Shown here: positions 7,795 to 44,700 of the stretch, piece by piece | How positions within the stretch are numbered: the stretch's first letter is position 1 | Layout: each line of letters starts with the position of its first letter | Assembly (NCBI RefSeq): GCF_003918875.1 | Contig: NW_025767309.1 | Location: forward strand, 558,001-622,000 | Source of the DNA: Haliotis rubra | Taxonomy: Eukaryota | Length of the DNA stretch: 64,000 bases | Direction: 5' to 3' | Program-made: the position numbers and the translations under genes | Notes under the pieces: model-generated | Told to the model about the DNA's origin: nothing | Database searches by the model: none | Seen by the model: the letters and a program-made list of their open reading frames with translations, nothing else

Positions 7795-7870
7795 TCTCCA
7801 GTTTACTGCTTCCCTTGAGCTTATTGCAAGTCATCGTCCAGATCTTGTGTCTGTCTAGACCCAGCTTCAG

Positions 7871-7940
7871 CGTCAGTCAGAATAAATGAAGGTTGATCCC
7901 TAAACCTTGAAGGGGATTGACTGGAGATGGTTTGCTGGCG
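7871..7940 (+). promoter_or_regulatory. Type II SECIS element, GPX4-A 3'UTR
   Basis: ATGA at 7886-7889, helix GGTTGATCCC/GGGATTGACT, apical AAA at 7902-7904 with mini-stem CCT/AGG, 3' GA at 7924-7925, lower helix CGTCAG/CTGGCG. Confidence 0.92.
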
Positions 7941-10900
7941 TACAAACCACTCTGACTGGACACTGGTCAGTGCTGGACCTAGCTGGACATAACCATGGGT
8001 AGTGACTAGTTGTATGTGTAATAGTATCAGAGACACTTAACATTGTCTTAGCATAAATCAGATACTGCCTTGGCTTATTAGATGTATTACATCAAGACAA
8101 ACAATAAATGCAGTTTAATGATATTATAAATCACATTTTAAGTGCCCATTAATCGATAGTTCGGATACAGGAATTACTATGTGCTATTTGTCTTCTTTTG
8201 GACATGTTGTAGAACTTTTCTATTAAAGAAAGATGTTATGATGTTTATCAAATACAGACTGATCTCAGAAACTATGGCAATGTAACAATAAGTGTGATAA
8301 AAACAAATATACATGTATGTGTTATATGCAGTCGAAACTAAAGGGTTACTCAAGGGCAATAACTGTGATATTCTCCGCCAGCTGTGTAATATACCCATCT
8401 TATTCTTATTGTCTGCGATACTTTGCTGTGTTATTGGGAAGGTACGTAGATGTTTCTCAAGAAAATCTGTATTTCCTTGTGCATACATGGACACTCGAGC
8501 GTAATGTGCAGCCCCATTCTTGAGTATAAGTTTCAGTATGATGTCATACCATGCACAGTCAAAAGAATACTGCATTGCTTCAGATAAACGAACAAGAGAA
8601 AACAGACTTGATCATAGGCAGCAGTATTGGTAATATTCAGAAATATTCTTAACACTTTTCAGAATCAGATACTGTTGAAACAAATCTGGCATGCTTCAAT
8701 ACTAAGGTGTTGTCTTTGTTTTGGATTTTCAAAACTCATTGCATGTCCAATGCATACACCCTATCAACACAGCTATTTGTTGTGAAAAAAGTATGTGGTA
8801 CCCATTTTATGCATAGAGTAATAATTTAACAACTGATTAAGTTTATTCATTTTTATGGGAGAACGTGAGTGCTGCCCAGGGTCTGGTTGTTTATTGTTGT
8901 TTTTTACTTCAACAGAACGTCAAATGACACTGATATATGTATTGTTTGAGCGGAATCTAGAAGCATGTCTATTTTATACCACAATATTATATTTTATAAT
9001 TAACAATATATTCTTTTATACAGTATTAACAGTCTGATGTTAATTGTTGTTGATGCATTTGAAAGGAAACCTTGAGTCATGAATTGTTGATAGAGATCAG
9101 CAGACACAATACGTGGGCTGGATGCAGGACGGATCCATTACCTGCTTGGGATCTATATCCTGTTTGATGAAAGAAGGGTGGTTACAGTGCTCACATTTCT
9201 TTTGTCATCTGATTACTGACTAGTTTTTTTTATCACGTGCTGCATATTTTGGTGAACACACTGTGCTAGTGTTGACTTTGACAGTTTCCTTCTTGAAAGG
9301 TGGGGTAGCCTAATGGTTAAAGCGTTGGCCACCCCTGGGTACAATGTGTGAAGCCCATTTCTGGTGTCCCCTGCCGTGATGTTGCTGGAATATTGCTAAA
9401 AGCGGCGTAAAATCAAACTCAGTCAGTCAGTCAGTCCTTGAAAGGTCCATCCCTAAAAGTCATTGATAGTAGATATCTTTCTAAGGGATTCTTCTGAAGA
9501 TTTTGTTATCCTGTTATATTCATATTTAGGTTTGAGAAGTAATTTTGAAATTGTTATTATTTCAAATATCAAAATGAATATTTTTAGCTCACCTGACTAA
9601 TAGTCAAGTTCATCTTTCATCCTTTCAACAGAAACCAGTAGACCAATGAAGCTGAAATGTAACAGACATTTTCAACCACCTCAATTTGTTTCCAGATGTT
9701 TGAATCTTGTTTGGCACTCATATTGGAAAAGGTATTTATGACAATTTTTCTCATATTTGTTCAAAATGGATTAGTTTTGTGGCTCTAAATGTGTGTTTGT
9801 TTTTTCTGATGTGTTAATTTTTAAGTTTATATTTGACCATTGCACTTTGAAAATGGTCCAATATTGTTGCAAAATTCTTTTCCTCAGGAACTAATGGGCC
9901 AGTAAAACTCCATATGCTCATTCATTCACAATGATGACACCTGATCTTGTTCAGGAAATCTGTTTTTCAGTGTGGCGACCACAATGGCCATGTTGAAAAT
10001 TCTTGTATGGCCATTACACAGACATTTTTTTACAAAATATTATGAATTTGTTATGGGATGCAATAATTGCAGTAGTTGCTAAGGTGCTATGTGAGTGGAC
10101 ACAGGGTGACTGTTTGCCTGTTCCACCACACATAGTGGTTCTAACCTGACACAGATTATGTTTCAGACATTTATTTACATCACTGGTGCATGCTTAAAAA
10201 TTGTAAATTGGTTGTTATGTTTTAATGTTTATATACAGAGATGAAGTTATAGATATTTTGTCTCTGCATCCATATTTATTGTATCTAATATCTGTTTATA
10301 TACAAGGGTAAAGGTTTATTTTGTGTGATGTCACCAATATATTTGTACGGACATAATCATGGTGACAAAAGTAAATGTTATTCATGTGGTTCGTTTTTCA
10401 ATGTCAGATGACAACAATAAGAAATAAATTGAGTCTGGTGCTGCATAATTACTGGGGTAAATATTTCAACTTTATAAAGGCATCCTGTTCATCACTGGGC
10501 CAATGTAATTACTCACTGATTTACTGGACACTTAATAATGTAGTTATCTAACAAGATTGGTCCGGCAGAAAGGATATTTTGGCACAAACTCATTACAATC
10601 TTCTTGACATCTTTGAGACATTTAGAAGTTAAACAAATATAAATACATGATTCTTTGTCCTTTCATTCAAAACAAGATAAAAATGTGTTTGTGTGAAATA
10701 ATTAGTATGCTGCTGCCTTTTTGTGGTTTGTATTTATTTGCTGAGTTAGTTTTAGTGAAAGTTCTAGTCCTGTGATTTTTGTGAACTACAATTATTATAC
10801 TCAGATACATAGTCAGCGTCTTGTTGGTTGTTTAGTCACGTCTTTCAATATATTTATATTATCGGTATATATTTTTATGTATCTGAGCAACATTATATTC

Positions 10901-21600: not shown

Positions 21601-22231
21601 CAAGATGAAACCTATCTGAACATGGTACCGTCCCTGTCTTATCCTATCATTTTCAGATGCTGTCCGCACCATGTGGATGTTGTAGCGCCAATAAATGTAT
21701 CACTGGAATACTGCTGAATGAGGCATTAAACACAAGACATCAATTGCTTTTAGTATCAGAAACAAACAGAACTGACTTTCACTTTATTTATTTGGAGTAT
21801 GAGCCTTCTAAGAAGAGCACCCAGCTGTATGAACGTTGGAGTTTGGATGTGCATTTCATCGTTATGATCAGTCAAAGTGACAATATTCTTGATAGTACAT
21901 GCAATTAAACTAACTGCCTTATCCCAATTTATACTAAAATATTAAGTTCAAGATAAAAGCTAGGTTATGAATGATCACTATAGTGATCTTATAGTACTCA
22001 GAACACAATAGTTCTCAGAAAATACAGAATGCAGTCTTGTGAAAAAAAATATGTGAATTTCAAAATGTGTCGTTCATACACTTAAGAACTTCAGATTTCA
22101 TGTGATGACTTCTGGTCCAATTGAAAAGCAGTATTTCATGTAAACTTCACATTAAAAATTCTTTCATTTTGGAAGGGGTCCAATGTTCATTCGCTGCATG
22201 TACTTCCAAACTCAATGGTAGACTTTTTCTA

Positions 22232-23496
22232 CCAGGGGTGGATGAACAGTTCTGAGTCTAACTATGATGGACTGCATTGATAGAGTTGGTTGCAAGTCAT
22301 CTTTCAAAATGATCCCCTCTGAAGTCCACACATTTCACCCAACAACACAAACATGCCTGGATCCCAATGGTGTAGATGTCCTCTTGGTAGTGGATACATC
22401 CTTCATGGCGGAACTGATGTAATATCACTTGCATAATTCTTAACAGGACATTCTTTGATCGAGTGAGGGAAGAGGAGGAAATCTGACGGTGCCCACATCT
22501 TGTGAATGTGGATGATGTCAATAAATTTAAACAACAGACGCATTGCAGACTGAGGTGCAAGTACAGTCTTTAATTAAGAGACGACACATCTTTATTTTTC
22601 CCCCACAATTGTGTCTGATATTCCTATTTAGCGGGCTTTTCAGACCAGCCATTTGTGGTCTGACCTTTCCCATGGTAGTCCTTCAGCAGGATTACTGTGG
22701 AATCTCAGAAAGGCAAAGCCGTATCACATTGCCAAACATGCTTTGTTGTCTTCTTCTTTGTTGGAGATGTTATATGACGGCACAGGTTTGACTGTTGTTT
22801 AACTGTTTTGTCGGTTGTTCTGGTGAACGACCCAATCCTGATCCATGGTTACAAAACAGTCCAACTGCAGCCTGGTCTGTTCAAAACAACATGAATTCTC
22901 ACCAGAAATGGAGAAATCTGGAGCGTTTCTGATCAGGAGTTTGAAGCATCTGAACTTTCTGTCATGCCTAGTTTATTACTGAGAATGTTGGAAACTCTCT
23001 CTTGAGAGATACCTACTTTATTGGCTATGCGGCGTGCACTGATTCCTGGATCATTCAAAATAATACCACATATTTTATCAACATTTTCCTTAGTGGTCAC
23101 AGTTGTGGGTCTTCCTGATCTTGGATCATCTTGGAGACTCTCTTTTCCCCTCCTGAACTCCGCTGCCCACCTTTTAACAGTGGCAAAGGAAGGAGCATCC
23201 TCTCCTAACGTTGACACCATGTCGGCATGGATGGCTGTTGGGGTGAGCCCTTTCATGTGGAGATACTTGATGACAGCTCGGTTGCCTATTTTGTCCATTT
23301 TCATCAACAGAGAATGCCTGGTGACTTTGGTGCCAGCAGAAACCGCTGCCTGGTTTTGTAGCTGGTTCCAGTGCAGTTTGTAAGCACTTGGTGAACAAGT
23401 TGTCTTATTGAGTAGGCGAAGGCTTTTATGTAATACATGCAAACCGTAGCTTCTGATTTCATTTATTTAGGCTCAGAACTTTTCAGCCACCCCACG
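22232..23496 (-). mobile_element. Mariner element, ~1.27 kb, catalytic domain decayed
   Basis: TA-flanked 29-bp TIRs at 22232-22260 and 23468-23496 (5 mismatches). Remnants TPDQKRSR, FVTMDQDW, ILLKDYHGKGQT and WVKCVDFRGDHFER are interrupted by stops and frameshifts. Confidence 0.9.
22933..23298 (-). CDS. Mariner paired-like (bipartite HTH) DNA-binding-domain-only protein, 121 aa (GVQW3-like), possibly domesticated
   Basis: Uninterrupted MDKIGNRAVIKYLHMKGLTPTAIHADM...PSFATVKRWAAEFRRGKESLQDDPRSGRP...ISARRIANKVGISQERVSNIL. Stops where the WVP linker should be. Confidence 0.6.
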   Translation of the reverse strand: MDKIGNRAVIKYLHMKGLTPTAIHADMVSTLGEDAPSFATVKRWAAEFRRGKESLQDDPRSGRPTTVTTKENVDKICGIILNDPGISARRIANKVGISQERVSNILSNKLGMTESSDASNS

Positions 23497-23639
23497 TATT
23501 TCTTTGTAGTGAATATACGATAGTGCTTAGTCATCATATTATAAGAACTATAAGGAGATGGAGAGCTGGTACATTTTTCACTCTCTCTAATACACGTATG
23601 TATGGAAATGTACACGCTATATAGTGTGACAGTAGTAAG

Positions 23640-23794
23640 AGTGATGTACGAAACTACTTGGGTCGTCGACACTTCGAACTCCAAACAGCGCATGCGTCCG
23701 CTCCATCGCCCGGTGTCATCGCTGTAAGGAGTGCGTCAGCTATTTCCCACATTTGTTTACATGCTGAAAGGTCCATTGTCGAGAAGGAGCTGAA
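23640..23794. promoter_or_regulatory. CpG-rich promoter/5'UTR of GPX4-B, potentially bidirectional
   Basis: Locally CpG-rich. NRF1-like GCGCATGCG at 23688-23696; TGTAAGGAGT and ACATTTGTTTACATG shared with GPX4-A. Confidence 0.6.
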
Positions 23795-23797
23795 ATG
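23795..23797 (+). CDS. GPX4: GPX4 copy B exon 1 coding part (ATG only)
   Basis: GAAATG|gtaatg, phase 0 matching exon 2. Context is homologous to copy A exon 1. Confidence 0.65.
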
Positions 23798-24701
23798 GTA
23801 ATGTACCGCACTTATCGTTTTCAAATTTCTTATTTCTTACTATTCTATTCTTAAACACTGCAGTCGCATACAACGGTTTTCAATCATGCAGGTGTGTGAA
23901 TCAGATACCTTCGTCAATTGTCACTATCACCTATTCCATTTGATTATATAAACGCTAGCACTGAGAGTATGTTTCGTGTATCGACGTAAGTTTACATGGT
24001 TAAATAGGGTAAGCTAGTAGGTCTTATCCTTTAAGTTGGATGTTTTGTTATTTATTCACCAAATTCTAGAAAACCAATCAAGCAGTTACTGTCAGCGAGT
24101 GTTGGAAGCCTGTCAGTTCAAAGGTTCACTCTACTGCTGACCCAGATCAAACATGGCTAGAGAGTGCATGCAAGCATCGAATCAAGTTCAAACAGGTGTT
24201 GGCAAGAGTAGATGGACTTTGATAGATACCCAGCCTTCAAATGATGTCAGGAAAAGAATTAGTCGATATGAGAATTTTGTTCATGGGGGCTTGTAGTGCA
24301 GTGTAACCTGGTAAGGTACAAACGTGGTCATTCATTTATTGGTGGGGGATTGGATGATGGGGTTGAGGGGGGAGGTAGAGTGGTTAAGGGGGTCTTCACT
24401 TTTCCTCAACTGACCCAGCCATGATTATCATGATTGTGAGTCAGCATGCTTCAATGTGATAGTTGATCTGTCAACACTGTGATGTATGTCATGAGTTTAT
24501 TTGATCTGGTTATCCTTAAGCGTGGTAACTGACAGTCACTGACAACAGGCTATTATATGTCAGTAAGAGGACAGTCTAGCCTCTCCTATATAGGTGCAGG
24601 TGCATCCTGTTCATGCTAAGGTTTAGAATTTGATCTTCCTGTGGATTAAAAACACTGATAATGAAACATGTCTGTGATCTGGGTACAAGTTTTACTTGTG
24701 A

Positions 24702-41632: not shown

Positions 41633-41722
41633 CCTCCCATGATTGTTGCCCTCCACGTCTACCATGTAATGCTGCAGCAAAGTCATCATCCAGATCTTGT
41701 GTCTGTCTAGACCCAGCTTCAG

Positions 41723-41792
41723 CGTCAGTCAGAATGAATGAAGGTTGATCCCTAAACCTTGAAGGGGATTGACTGGAGATGGTTTGCTGGCG
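41723..41792 (+). promoter_or_regulatory. Type II SECIS element, GPX4-B 3'UTR
   Basis: ATGA at 41738-41741 with the same AAA loop, helices and GA as copy A. Confidence 0.93.
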
Positions 41793-44700
41793 TACAAACC
41801 ACTCTGACTGGACACTGGTCAGTGCTGGACCTAGCTGGACATAACCATGGGTAGTGACTAGTTGTATGTGTAATAGTATATGATATTTATCTGCAAGTGT
41901 ATTTATATACCAGATGTGTATATTACTGTTTATGAGTGTGTATGAGGTGAATTTAAAGAAAGGTTGTTTCAAAATTTCAGGAACTATTGGCAATTGGGAG
42001 TTTGGTTGATTCTGTCCAGTTTGTTTGTTAGGATGCAGTATTTTATATTTTGCATTGAACGTGTTGAATCAGTTTTATGTTGTTCATGTGGTTTTAAATC
42101 TACTTGGTCTTTGTATAAAAACCATAAGTGCTGCCAGTTAAGTTTACTTCAAAAGATCACACTACTATATAATTTGAGAAATACTGAAAATCATTGGTTA
42201 AGTTCCAATTAAAATCATATCTTTTTATTTTGATGCAATTTTTAAATTTGAAAGAGCTGTGACAGATAAAATATATTTTTCAATTCATGAACTAAAACAT
42301 TAGATCTTCACTCGTTATTTGTACATTTTATTCAGATATTAATCAGTTCCAGTCCTTAGTGAAAGTACCGGTATATGTTCGAGATACTCAAGTTCATCTT
42401 TATCAAATAACATTTGTGTTTGTATTTATACTTAAAAAATGATTAATTCTTGGTGTTTTGCCTGCATATCTAATTACATTTAAGTTTGTTTATTTATGCA
42501 TATACTTAAGAGTTGTGTTCCCAGTTATGATTCCAGCATGATTATGTAAATGTTGTTTAAGTTTGTCAAGGCTTTTTAACCTTTTATGTTTTTTAGTGCT
42601 GTATGTTCTGTATTCATAACTCTTATACAGTCCCAATGTGCCAGTTTCTAACCTTATCTTCACAGCCTGGTGTAAGTCCAACATCTATGACTGGTCCAAG
42701 TCGGTCCAAAGTGAATCAGTAGTTGGTGCTATTATTCAGATGACATATGCTTTAACAGCCAGTGAAATATACTTTATTGTATTATCTTTCTATGAATAAA
42801 AGTTATAAATATCTAAATTTTAAACATTAAATATTTGTCATTTTGATGATTCTTGCCCATGTTCTCGATGCCTGTTCTTGAACTGAGAACTGGATTATCC
42901 TTAGGTCGGTGTCCTGTTCTGTTTGTCCAAACAGAAAAAAACAAGAGGGCTTTGATTTTACTTTAATACAATGTCATTCAAAGTGCCAAGTTTAGTTTGC
43001 CAGAAGTTATAAATTTAATGCTGAAGACCTTGAGGAATGCCAAGCCAATTCCTGGTGTTCCTTTCCATCTTGTTCCAGGATTGTTTCTTAGGCAGGTAAA
43101 CATTTTATTCACTTGACAGTTAAAAGATGATTTTTGAATTCAAGTTATCGTGGTTATGGAGAATATGGTTTATGTAAATTGAAGGTATCAAAATCACATG
43201 CTGTGTTATAAGAGGTATGCTATATTTACAAAAAATGGCAACCTCCCCACGCGACTTGCTGTTCCCCAAACCTCACTTGTTTTCTTTTTACTTGGGTTTA
43301 TTAAGCACTCTTTCTTTCAAATTCTTGGATCAACCTCTAGTAAAATATGTTACATTCCATTCCACAAGAAGGAAAATACTTCTAGGAAATAGCTGAAGAA
43401 CTTCAATGGTCACGATAGTGAATATTTGCAATGTCAATCAGCAACAAGCAATGTTTCATTCCAGCAATCGATATTAATTACAGCATTACCTCCTGTTCGA
43501 ATCACTAAGTGGAGTATAAGTGAAATATATCTCCTATCATTGTATGTAACATGTTGTTGTTGGTTGAGTCCAAGGTGGTTGTTGAACTGTGAAGTTGTGC
43601 CAGTTTTTCTTGATGGATCATTGCTCATATATCATGAAAAAGTGAAACGTGAAGAGTAGAACTGGAAAATGGCATTTTTTGTTTAAGATAGACTACTTCA
43701 AATTAATAATTTCTTTTGATATATTTTCTCAGATGAATATATCAAGTTGCAGAATTAATGGGTTTATATGGAAAGGTGTTTATTTTTGGATGTTTAATGT
43801 ATTGTTAATATCTCATTAGTTCATGTTTACTTTAGATTTGTTTCTTTTACTGATTTTCTCATATCTGTGACTTTGTAGTCCATTTTAGAGTTATTCTGTA
43901 AGTAAATGTTTGTTGAAACAAAACAAAACAACATTTTGAGAAAGCAAATAATCACTTGGTTATGTCAGGAGGATTGATTTAGATTGTTGTATTTGTTTAT
44001 ATCAATGAGACTGTGTAATCCGAATGCTCTTAAAACTATTTCCAAGACAGTGATTGGGAACCTCCGTGTCCATGTAATATCAGGAGATAATTTTACTTGC
44101 TGTTTCATAGCCTGTTGATTATTTGTTAATGATGAACACAATCCTGTTTTTGATACGGATTCATCTGTTTTACTTCTGGTACCAAGTAAGAAAAGTTTAG
44201 TGGATATATATATCCATATAGGAAAGCTTCTCTTGCATTTTATCTGTTAGAAGTATTACATGATATATCCATCCTTTGATCCAAGGTTTCCAAACTCTAG
44301 ATACGGTAAGAACTGATACAATTTGTTGTGTAAAACATTTTTAGGTAAAGGGAATAAGACACCTTATGACTTGTCATTTAGCAAAACAGTTTCGTAAAGA
44401 TTATTTCACCCCAAATATAATTATAAATGATATTATTATTTAAACAGGGTCTTGTCATTGTATATTTTGTATTGATACAAACCATTGTTTGTTTCCAGCA
44501 TGGTTTCTAAAAATAATTGCCATATCTGAAGCCATATAACTTATACAAAACAGGCCTCTAGTTGTGCCATAAGTCGGGTAGGAACCATCAGAGTTTCGGG
44601 AAACATTGGTGTCTCAGTATAAACATGTTATCATGTATTGATTTGCTGTAAATCTTTACAGAATTAAGCCTTGATCTCTTGTTTAACCCGTCTATATAAT

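What the first reader, a model, noticed from the sequence alone, without database searches (positions are those of the whole stretch)
22232..23496. Candidate domesticated mariner DNA-binding protein sharing a promoter with GPX4-B
Seen: the element is old (TIRs differ at 5/29 positions; the catalytic half is riddled with stops and indels). Yet the 121-codon bipartite HTH region is stop-free and consensus-like, and it ends through a frameshifting deletion exactly at the WVP linker (TPDQKRSR resumes in another frame). Its 5' end lies about 300 bp from the GPX4-B ATG across a CpG-rich, NRF1-motif promoter, the position POLR2E occupies next to copy A. Inference: the duplicated bidirectional promoter captured a transposon-derived HTH gene, possibly a TIR-binding transcription factor or transposition repressor co-regulated with GPX4.
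Basis: partly seen in the sequence, partly recalled or inferred. Interest (0 to 1): 0.75.

Follow-up and report, generated by a model that had tools for sequence, protein, structure and literature searches.

The report
Dead mariner transposon, DNA-binding half intact
A 1.27-kb relic of a mariner jumping gene sits just upstream of one abalone GPX4 gene, and although its DNA-binding half is truly better preserved than its wrecked enzyme half, nothing yet shows that the host uses it as a gene or drives it from the GPX4 promoter.

Summary
A TA-flanked mariner copy lies on the minus strand at 22232-23496 in Haliotis rubra, and its terminal repeats differ at 5 of 30 positions. The first 121 codons (both helix-turn-helix motifs) are open. 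They end just after a 14-nt deletion that removes the WVP linker. The rest carries 10-13 frameshifts.

The contrast is not luck under even decay:
- No lesion in 366 nt has P about 0.0004-0.004.
- N-terminal identity to intact transposases (59-66%) equals that between intact ones.
- Catalytic identity (37-42%) falls below all 820 calibration pairs.

The insertion is shared with two other abalone species. Two RNA runs of the sister species hold low-depth contigs over the element.

Domestication is not shown:
- No RNA contig links the ORF to the GPX4-B promoter (mRNA start about 23718).
- Two upstream ORFs would precede the start codon.
- The ORF is as CpG-depleted as the junk around it.
- The non-coding 5' repeat is also consensus-like.
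- Preservation tracks where paralogous, mostly internally deleted copies exist.
- Between-species divergence is not clearly below background.

The best reading is a relic whose 5' part is younger or homogenised. A host-selected HTH protein remains possible, at about 20%. Such ORFs are routinely annotated as "GVQW3-like".

The parts
22232..23496 (-). Whole mariner relic, 1265 bp. It is flanked by the TA target duplication at 22230-22231 and 23497-23498.
   Evidence: Pieces of the relic match intact mariner transposases in order.
23467..23496 (-). 5' terminal inverted repeat. It has one derived change relative to the closest relative's repeats.
   Evidence: A paralogous RNA contig matches 23469-23492 with one difference.
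22232..22261 (-). 3' terminal inverted repeat. It has 3-4 derived changes.
23299..23466 (-). 5' untranslated part of the element. It holds a 52-codon upstream ORF (23462-23304) that ends 5 nt before the HTH start codon.
   Evidence: Two indels separate species A and B here, at 23415 and 23433.
22933..23298 (-). Open 121-codon reading frame plus its stop codon. It encodes the complete bipartite helix-turn-helix DNA-binding domain (P0001).
   Evidence: It is recorded as a called gene in GCA_003918875.1.
22949..22950 (-). Site of the 14-nt frameshifting deletion that removes the ARWVP linker codons.
22300..22948 (-). Dead catalytic (DD34D) part, with 10-13 frameshifts and 0-1 stop. It is 37-42% identical to intact transposases on the codons that align.
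23647..23797 (+). GPX4-B core promoter and exon 1. The mRNA 5' ends seen lie at 23718 and 23748, the ATG at 23795-23797 and the splice donor at 23798. The NRF1-like motif is at 23688-23696.

Best explanation
This is a dead mariner DNA transposon. It inserted at a TA about 220 bp upstream of the GPX4-B transcription start, before three abalone species split. The catalytic part is destroyed.

The 5' 550 bp (terminal repeat, leader and HTH-coding part) is far less decayed. I think the cause lies in transposon biology rather than host use. The most likely route is that the 5' part is younger than, or has been homogenised against, the many paralogs that keep only this part. That could happen by template switching during gap repair or by ectopic gene conversion. 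A modest share of luck then kept 121 codons free of stops and indels.

The ORF is therefore a 'GVQW3-like' HTH relic. It is transcribed at a low level, probably as part of pervasive or read-through RNA, and not as a GPX4-coupled gene.

Shown: the element's anatomy, the asymmetry between its halves, the shared insertion, the presence of RNA contigs, and the position of the GPX4-B start. Inferred: the cause of the asymmetry and the lack of host function.
For: - Anatomy of the element.
- The asymmetry is real. The catalytic/N-terminal identity ratio is 0.61-0.71, against a minimum of 0.85 in 820 pairs of intact transposases. No lesion in 366 nt has P 0.0004-0.004.
- Preservation is not limited to coding DNA. 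The 5' repeat has 1 derived change and the 3' repeat has 3-4.
- Depth from paralogs (at least 85% alike) in species B and C is 4-10 times single-copy over 22900-23500 and at the 3' tip, and about single-copy over 22300-22900. Joints such as 22275>23174, 22281>23111 and 22294>23290 point to internally deleted copies. The best-preserved stretch is therefore the one with the most potential conversion partners.
- CpG observed/expected is 0.33 in the ORF, 0.34 in the catalytic part and 0.38 in the flank.
- The ORF carries 19-21 unique amino-acid changes, against 4 in its closest relative.
- No RNA contig joins the ORF to the promoter, and upstream ORFs precede the start codon.
- Comparable HTH-only ORFs are common in other genomes and are auto-named GVQW3-like.
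Against: - No paralog sequence of this genome could be fetched, so the mosaic or conversion origin is inferred from depth profiles only. That profile is partly circular, because paralogs can be laid only where this copy is still consensus-like.
- CpG depletion is equal in both halves, which suggests equal age. The counts are small.
- In species C the stretch 23171-23344 (the first HTH motif plus the start region) has 4 changes where 11.7 are expected (P 0.009).
- The ORF shows no indel between species A and B over 22879-23288. Both points would also fit selection.
- RNA coverage is confined to 22157-23288 in two samples and is absent from both flanks. This looks like a discrete transcript.
- Ten of the 18 unique amino-acid changes cluster in residues 76-87. 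There SETMAR also has a DP motif. The excess of changes may therefore be a feature of the lineage and not decay.
Confidence: 0.55

Rival explanations
1. Domesticated gene. The host keeps the 121-residue HTH protein under purifying selection, for example as a protein that binds terminal repeats and regulates genes or represses transposition. It is expressed from near the GPX4-B promoter or from a start inside the element.
For: - The asymmetry between the halves is strong in both indels and substitutions.
- The DNA-binding domain is complete, with hits to the SETMAR and Mos1 structures.
- The insertion is shared by three species.
- There is no indel in species B across almost the whole ORF, and at most 2 gap letters in species C over 22737-23200.
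- Divergence is low over the first HTH motif in species C (P 0.009).
- RNA contigs carrying the species-B variants of this locus cover 22157-23288 in two samples, at a depth of 3-4 against 10-17 for GPX4-B.
- The precedent for transposase DNA-binding domains becoming host regulators is strong (bioRxiv 10.1101/2020.05.07.082677).
Against: - No contig links the ORF to the promoter, and two long upstream ORFs lie in that leader.
- The strand of the RNA is unknown, and the RNA runs through the dead part and past the element end.
- Overall A-C divergence is near background: 34 changes against 41 expected.
- The non-coding 5' repeat is equally preserved.
- The ORF lies in CpG-depleted DNA outside the CpG-rich island.
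- No protein more than 71% identical was found in any other annotated genome in the 67-212 aa range, although Haliotis cracherodii proteins are in the database.
- The decay of the catalytic part implies an age several times the A-C split. An old host gene should therefore be visible in more distant annotated abalones.
Confidence: 0.2
2. Pure chance. The copy decayed evenly, and its first 121 codons simply escaped stops and indels. It was picked out because a scan of many windows meets many mariner relics.
For: - HTH-only ORFs of 110-210 aa from mariner relics are numerous in public genomes.
- For a young 5' part, survival for the time since insertion is of the order of 1%, by my estimate from the indel rates. 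Ten or more paralogs are seen.
Against: Even decay is rejected independently by substitutions. N-terminal identity shows no loss, while the catalytic part has lost about a third. Even at the most lenient calibration ratio, the binomial P is 1e-3 to 1e-5. The lesion count gives P 0.0004-0.004.
Confidence: 0.1
3. Selection within the transposon lineage. The copy descends from a non-autonomous line that was mobilised in trans. In that line the terminal few hundred bases were kept because they are needed in cis for transposition, while the middle decayed before this insertion.
For: - Both ends are better kept than the middle. Nucleotide identity to the closest relative is 76% in the ORF and 69% over 22300-22499, but 50-56% over 22500-22935.
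- Internally deleted derivatives that keep the same ends exist in two species.
Against: - Paralogs that shared the same decayed middle would have been laid on 22300-22900, and none were.
- The 3' 270 bp still carries 3-4 frameshifts.
- A cis requirement does not explain why no indel at all fell within 366 nt.
Confidence: 0.1

Closest known systems
Mariner (Tc1/mariner, DD34D) transposon relics; the closest sequence found is a mariner on a 1348-bp contig filed under a Candidatus Thiodiazotropha MAG (L002), probably clam host DNA
   Same: - TA target duplication.
- Terminal repeats of about 30 bp.
- Length of about 1.27 kb.
- An HTH_48 plus HTH_32 N-terminus.
- Ordered remnants of the catalytic domain.
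- 71% amino-acid and 76% nucleotide identity to L002 over the HTH part.
   Different: The decay of this copy is strongly lopsided. No intact or closely related family member could be retrieved from abalone.
'Protein GVQW3-like' gene models (mariner-derived proteins containing HTH_48)
   Same: A short protein made only of the mariner N-terminal HTH region. Models with this name from Gigantopelta, Oratosquilla and Haliotis cracherodii are among the hits. The name is described as Mos1-derived with an HTH_48 domain in PMC9783078. This ORF is itself a called gene in the public record.
   Different: These are independent relics, 56-58% identical to this ORF, and not orthologs. The name carries no tested function.
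SETMAR, KRABINER and other host-transposase fusion genes
   Same: A mariner DNA-binding domain is kept while transposition is lost. The expected targets would be the family's terminal repeats scattered through the genome (bioRxiv 10.1101/2020.05.07.082677). The SETMAR DNA-binding domain structure 7S03 is the best solved match (E 1.4e-8).
   Different: Those genes arose by splicing of host exons onto the transposase. They keep a full-length frame and show dN/dS below 1 across more than 50 My. Here there is no host exon and no splice. The protein is HTH-only, and there is no evidence of selection.

Membership tests
mariner family of Tc1/mariner DNA transposons | TA target-site duplication and terminal inverted repeats of about 28-30 bp | tested here: met
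mariner family of Tc1/mariner DNA transposons | Transposase N-terminus with a bipartite helix-turn-helix (HTH_48 plus a second HTH) | tested here: met
mariner family of Tc1/mariner DNA transposons | DD34D catalytic domain (Transposase_1) | tested here: inconclusive
   Ordered remnants match residues 117-349 of intact 349-aa transposases, but the frame is broken 10-13 times. The catalytic triad was not scored.
domesticated (host-selected) transposase-derived gene | Single orthologous insertion shared across species | tested here: met
   Contigs of species B and C span the element-flank junctions: X5 record 21, X12 records 7 and 11.
domesticated (host-selected) transposase-derived gene | Reading frame open in all orthologs | tested here: inconclusive
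   Species B has no gaps over 22879-23288. Species C has 2 gap letters at an unknown position within 22737-23200. Substitutions were not listed.
domesticated (host-selected) transposase-derived gene | dN/dS significantly below 1 since insertion | not testable with these tools
   Ortholog sequences could not be retrieved. Total A-C divergence over 22737-23344 is 34 changes against 41 expected. dN/dS of 0.25 against L002 reflects mostly the active phase of both elements.
domesticated (host-selected) transposase-derived gene | A defined mRNA of the right strand with its own or a captured promoter | tested here: inconclusive
   Low-depth RNA contigs cover 22157-23288 with unknown strand, and none lies between 23335 and 23717.
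gene driven by a bidirectional promoter shared with GPX4-B (a duplicate of the POLR2E-GPX4-A arrangement) | Promoter homologous to that of copy A on the POLR2E side, with divergent transcripts starting from it | tested here: not met
   Only 12-, 10- and 15-nt islands are shared, all within about 150 bp of the ATG. No divergent RNA contig was seen at the promoter. Contigs can show presence but not absence.

The most novel reading that the evidence does not exclude
The 121-residue HTH-only protein is a host gene of the blacklip/greenlip abalone lineage. It was cut down from a mariner transposase by the 14-nt deletion and is kept by selection. It would bind the family's terminal repeats, which are scattered on internally deleted copies, as a regulator or as a repressor of transposition.
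Probability: 0.2. Interest if true: 0.55.

Novelty: new member of a known kind. Interest (0 to 1): 0.33.

Why it matters
If the HTH part were under host selection, this would be a clean invertebrate case of a stand-alone transposase DNA-binding domain becoming a gene without fusion to host exons. It would come with a ready-made network of binding sites on deleted mariner copies.

As the evidence stands, the main value is a caution. An open HTH reading frame in a mariner relic, even one that is significantly better kept than the rest of the element and is transcribed at a low level, is not enough to call domestication. Mosaic age or gene conversion among paralogs gives the same picture.

Tried and rejected
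- No other copy of the element is in the window.
- A phage-collection BLAST found no match.
- A word search with the ORF found no ortholog or paralog above 71% identity in the 67-212 aa range. This says little, because most abalone assemblies carry no gene calls.
- An exact-protein look-up returned only the source contig.
- A 20-nt conserved word scanned in JGI metagenomes gave two unrelated contigs.
- Look-ups of earlier findings by sequence and by words gave nothing useful.
- The RR-to-PG change in the second HTH motif first looked like decay. I rejected that reading because SETMAR has DP at the same place.
- The relative-rate excess of amino-acid changes first looked like neutral decay of the ORF. 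I downgraded it because 10 of the 18 changes cluster in residues 76-87.
- There is no hypermutation signature in the substitution spectrum of either half.
- I did not run the large representative-protein search. Clusters at 50% identity cannot separate orthologs from the family.
- I did not look up the spliced 173-aa GPX4-B protein to fetch orthologous loci, because it has no contiguous reference and would have had to be typed.

Full report
WHAT IS THERE

The window comes from Haliotis rubra, assembly GCA_003918875.1, contig QXJH01000606.1. Earlier notes of the scan already called the genome an abalone.

At 22232-23496 lies a 1265-bp mariner element on the minus strand.
- It is flanked by TA on both sides.
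- Its terminal inverted repeats differ at 5 of the first 30 positions.
- The repeat core occurs nowhere else in the window, and no second copy is present.

From ATG 23298 to the stop at 22935-22933 there is an open frame of 121 codons (P0001).
- It matches Pfam HTH_48 and HTH_32.
- It matches the solved DNA-binding domains of SETMAR (7S03, E 1.4e-8) and Mos1.

The frame ends five codons after a 14-nt deletion at 22949/22950. The deletion removes the codons for ARWVP, and TPDQKRSR continues in another frame.

HOW BROKEN IS THE REST?

I aligned the element, allowing frameshifts, to eight intact 349-residue mariner transposases found through a word search. Breaks were only marked.
- The first 116 residues align with no stop and no frameshift, at 59-66% identity.
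- The remaining 233 residues need 10-13 frameshifts and 0-1 stop, spread about one per 45 nt between 22375 and 22950.
- On the codons that do align, that part is only 37-42% identical.

For calibration I used 820 pairs among 41 intact transposases. The ratio of catalytic to N-terminal identity has a median of 1.08 and never falls below 0.85. This element gives 0.61-0.71. Its N-terminal identity equals that between intact transposases, whose mean is 58%.

So the HTH part shows no measurable loss, while the catalytic part has lost about a third of its matches.
- At the lesion density of the catalytic part, the chance of none in 366 nt is 0.0004-0.004.
- The substitution contrast alone has P of 1e-3 to 1e-5, even at the most lenient calibration.
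- Even decay plus luck is therefore a poor explanation for this copy, although a scan that meets very many relics will meet outliers.

NEIGHBOURHOOD

The GPX4-B ATG is at 23795-23797 and is followed directly by a splice donor.
- RNA contigs of a sister species start at 23718 and 23748.
- They are spliced at 23798 to the next exon.
- The element therefore ends about 220 bp upstream of the GPX4-B mRNA start.

CpG observed/expected is 1.22 over 23647-23797, but only 12 CpGs are involved. The 150 bp that touch the element are AT-rich. The ORF itself is as CpG-depleted (0.33) as the catalytic part (0.34) and the flank (0.38). The ORF thus lies outside the unmethylated island.

In copy A, POLR2E starts 557 bp from the GPX4-A ATG on the other strand.
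- Between copies A and B, only three short collinear islands (12, 10 and 15 nt) within about 150 bp of the ATG are recognisably shared.
- Nothing on the POLR2E side is shared, even after the element is removed in silico.
- "Duplicated bidirectional promoter" is therefore a matter of geometry and is not shown homology.

OTHER SPECIES AND RNA (the only reads call allowed)

DNA contigs of two other organisms carry the same insertion at the same place. Species B is about 2.6% diverged and species C about 6.8%. Contigs span the right junction in B (23216-24499) and both junctions in C (21887-22456 and 23327-23534). The insertion thus predates their split.

Species B has no gap over 22879-23288. Species C has 2 gap letters somewhere in 22737-23200. 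Their position, and all substitutions inside the ORF, were not listed, so the state of the frame in the orthologs remains open.

A-C divergence by contig:

| Stretch | Divergence |
|---|---|
| Middle of the catalytic part | 11.1% |
| 22737-23200 | 6.5% |
| 23171-23344 | 2.3% (P 0.009 against a background of 6.75%) |

The whole stretch 22737-23344 has 34 changes against 41 expected (P 0.15). My rough Poisson comparison of a neutral and a selected model on these counts gives a likelihood ratio near 1.5. That is uninformative.

Two runs flagged as RNA are shown to be RNA by the spliced GPX4-B contigs.
- They hold low-depth contigs (3-4, against 10-17 for GPX4-B) over 22157-22455, 22317-22599, 22616-22893 and 23047-23288.
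- These contigs carry the species-B variants of this very locus.
- Nothing lies in either flank, and nothing lies between 23335 and 23717.
- The strand cannot be read from contigs.
- The RNA covers the dead part and 75 bp beyond the element.
- A paralogous mariner copy is also present in the RNA together with its flank.

The region is therefore transcribed at a low level in the sister species. The data do not show an mRNA for the HTH protein or a start at the GPX4-B promoter. A leader from that promoter would carry a 76-codon and a 52-codon upstream ORF. The second ends 5 nt before the HTH start codon.

WHY IS THE 5' PART BETTER KEPT?

Four observations point away from selection on the protein.
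1. The non-coding 5' terminal repeat is also consensus-like. It has one derived change, against 3-4 in the 3' repeat, judged against the repeats of the closest relative L002. A paralogous transcript matches it at 23 of 24 positions.
2. Paralog depth in both other species is 4-10 times single-copy over 22900-23500 and at the 3' tip, and about single-copy over 22300-22900. Joints indicate internally deleted derivatives that keep the 5' 200-390 bp and the 3' 50-60 bp. The order of preservation within the element follows this profile. That is what gene conversion against paralogs, or a mosaic made by template switching during gap repair, would give. It is also partly circular, because paralogs can only be laid where this copy still resembles them.
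3. The ORF has 19-21 private amino-acid changes, against 4 in L002 (P 0.001-0.003). However, ten of the 18 changes scored against the majority consensus cluster in residues 76-87. There SETMAR also has a DP motif, so this may be a lineage feature.
4. dN/dS of 0.25 against L002 (dN 0.185, dS 0.755) mostly records the time when both elements were active.

Two observations speak for selection: the low divergence of the first HTH motif in species C, and the lack of indels in the ORF between species. Equal CpG depletion of both halves speaks weakly against a younger 5' part.

I could not fetch any paralog or ortholog sequence, so the cause of the asymmetry remains inferred.

VERDICT

The object is a mariner relic of a known kind. 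It is already a called gene in the public record. Its type is routinely named "GVQW3-like", a label described as Mos1-derived with an HTH_48 domain (PMC9783078).

The lopsided decay is real and is mildly interesting.

| Reading | Weight |
|---|---|
| Transposon-intrinsic explanation (mosaic or homogenised 5' part) | about 0.55 |
| Host-selected HTH protein | about 0.2 |
| Cis-selection within a non-autonomous lineage | about 0.1 |
| Pure chance | about 0.1 |

The known benchmark for domestication is set by SETMAR, KRABINER and 81 host-transposase fusions, which show dN/dS below 1 over more than 50 My together with defined transcripts (bioRxiv 10.1101/2020.05.07.082677). Of those criteria, only the shared insertion is met here.

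Noticed in passing
window 23718-23798 (and 2369-2371 in copy A): In both GPX4 copies exon 1 contributes only the ATG before the splice donor. RNA contigs of the sister species start at 23718 and 23748 and are spliced at 23798 to the next exon. This gives an experimental 5' end for GPX4-B.
   Followed up: partly
window 21700-21799: A roughly 100-bp stretch with contig depth of about 9600 in species B and about 7350 in species C, against 25-50 for single-copy DNA. It is an extremely abundant short repeat. A second repeat covers 22000-22230, right next to the element.
   Followed up: no
window 22275-23290 (joints seen in species B and C): Paralogous copies of this mariner family appear to be internally deleted, MITE-like derivatives. 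Joints such as 22275>23174, 22281>23111 and 22294>23290 are seen. At least one paralog is present in RNA together with its flank.
   Followed up: partly
window 23042-23077 (residues 76-87 of the ORF): Ten of the 18 amino-acid changes private to this copy fall in one 12-residue stretch at the start of the second HTH motif. The conserved RR is replaced by PG. SETMAR has DP at the aligned position. This could be a local complex event or a lineage feature.
   Followed up: partly
L002 (GCA_025656195.1, JAHXHZ010000729.1, 1-1348): The closest relative is a nearly complete mariner on a 1348-bp contig filed under a Candidatus Thiodiazotropha (lucinid clam symbiont) MAG. It is almost certainly host DNA binned by mistake.
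   Followed up: no
window 22444-22739: The middle of the dead catalytic part diverges from species C faster than the local background: 33 changes in 296 nt against 20 expected (P 0.005). This is the opposite of the first HTH motif. The rate gradient along the element is unexplained.
   Followed up: partly
window 7828-8027 and 41680-41879: A 200-nt block is 99% identical between the 3' ends of the two GPX4 copies, while the rest of the genes is barely alignable. This agrees with the earlier SECIS note.
   Followed up: no
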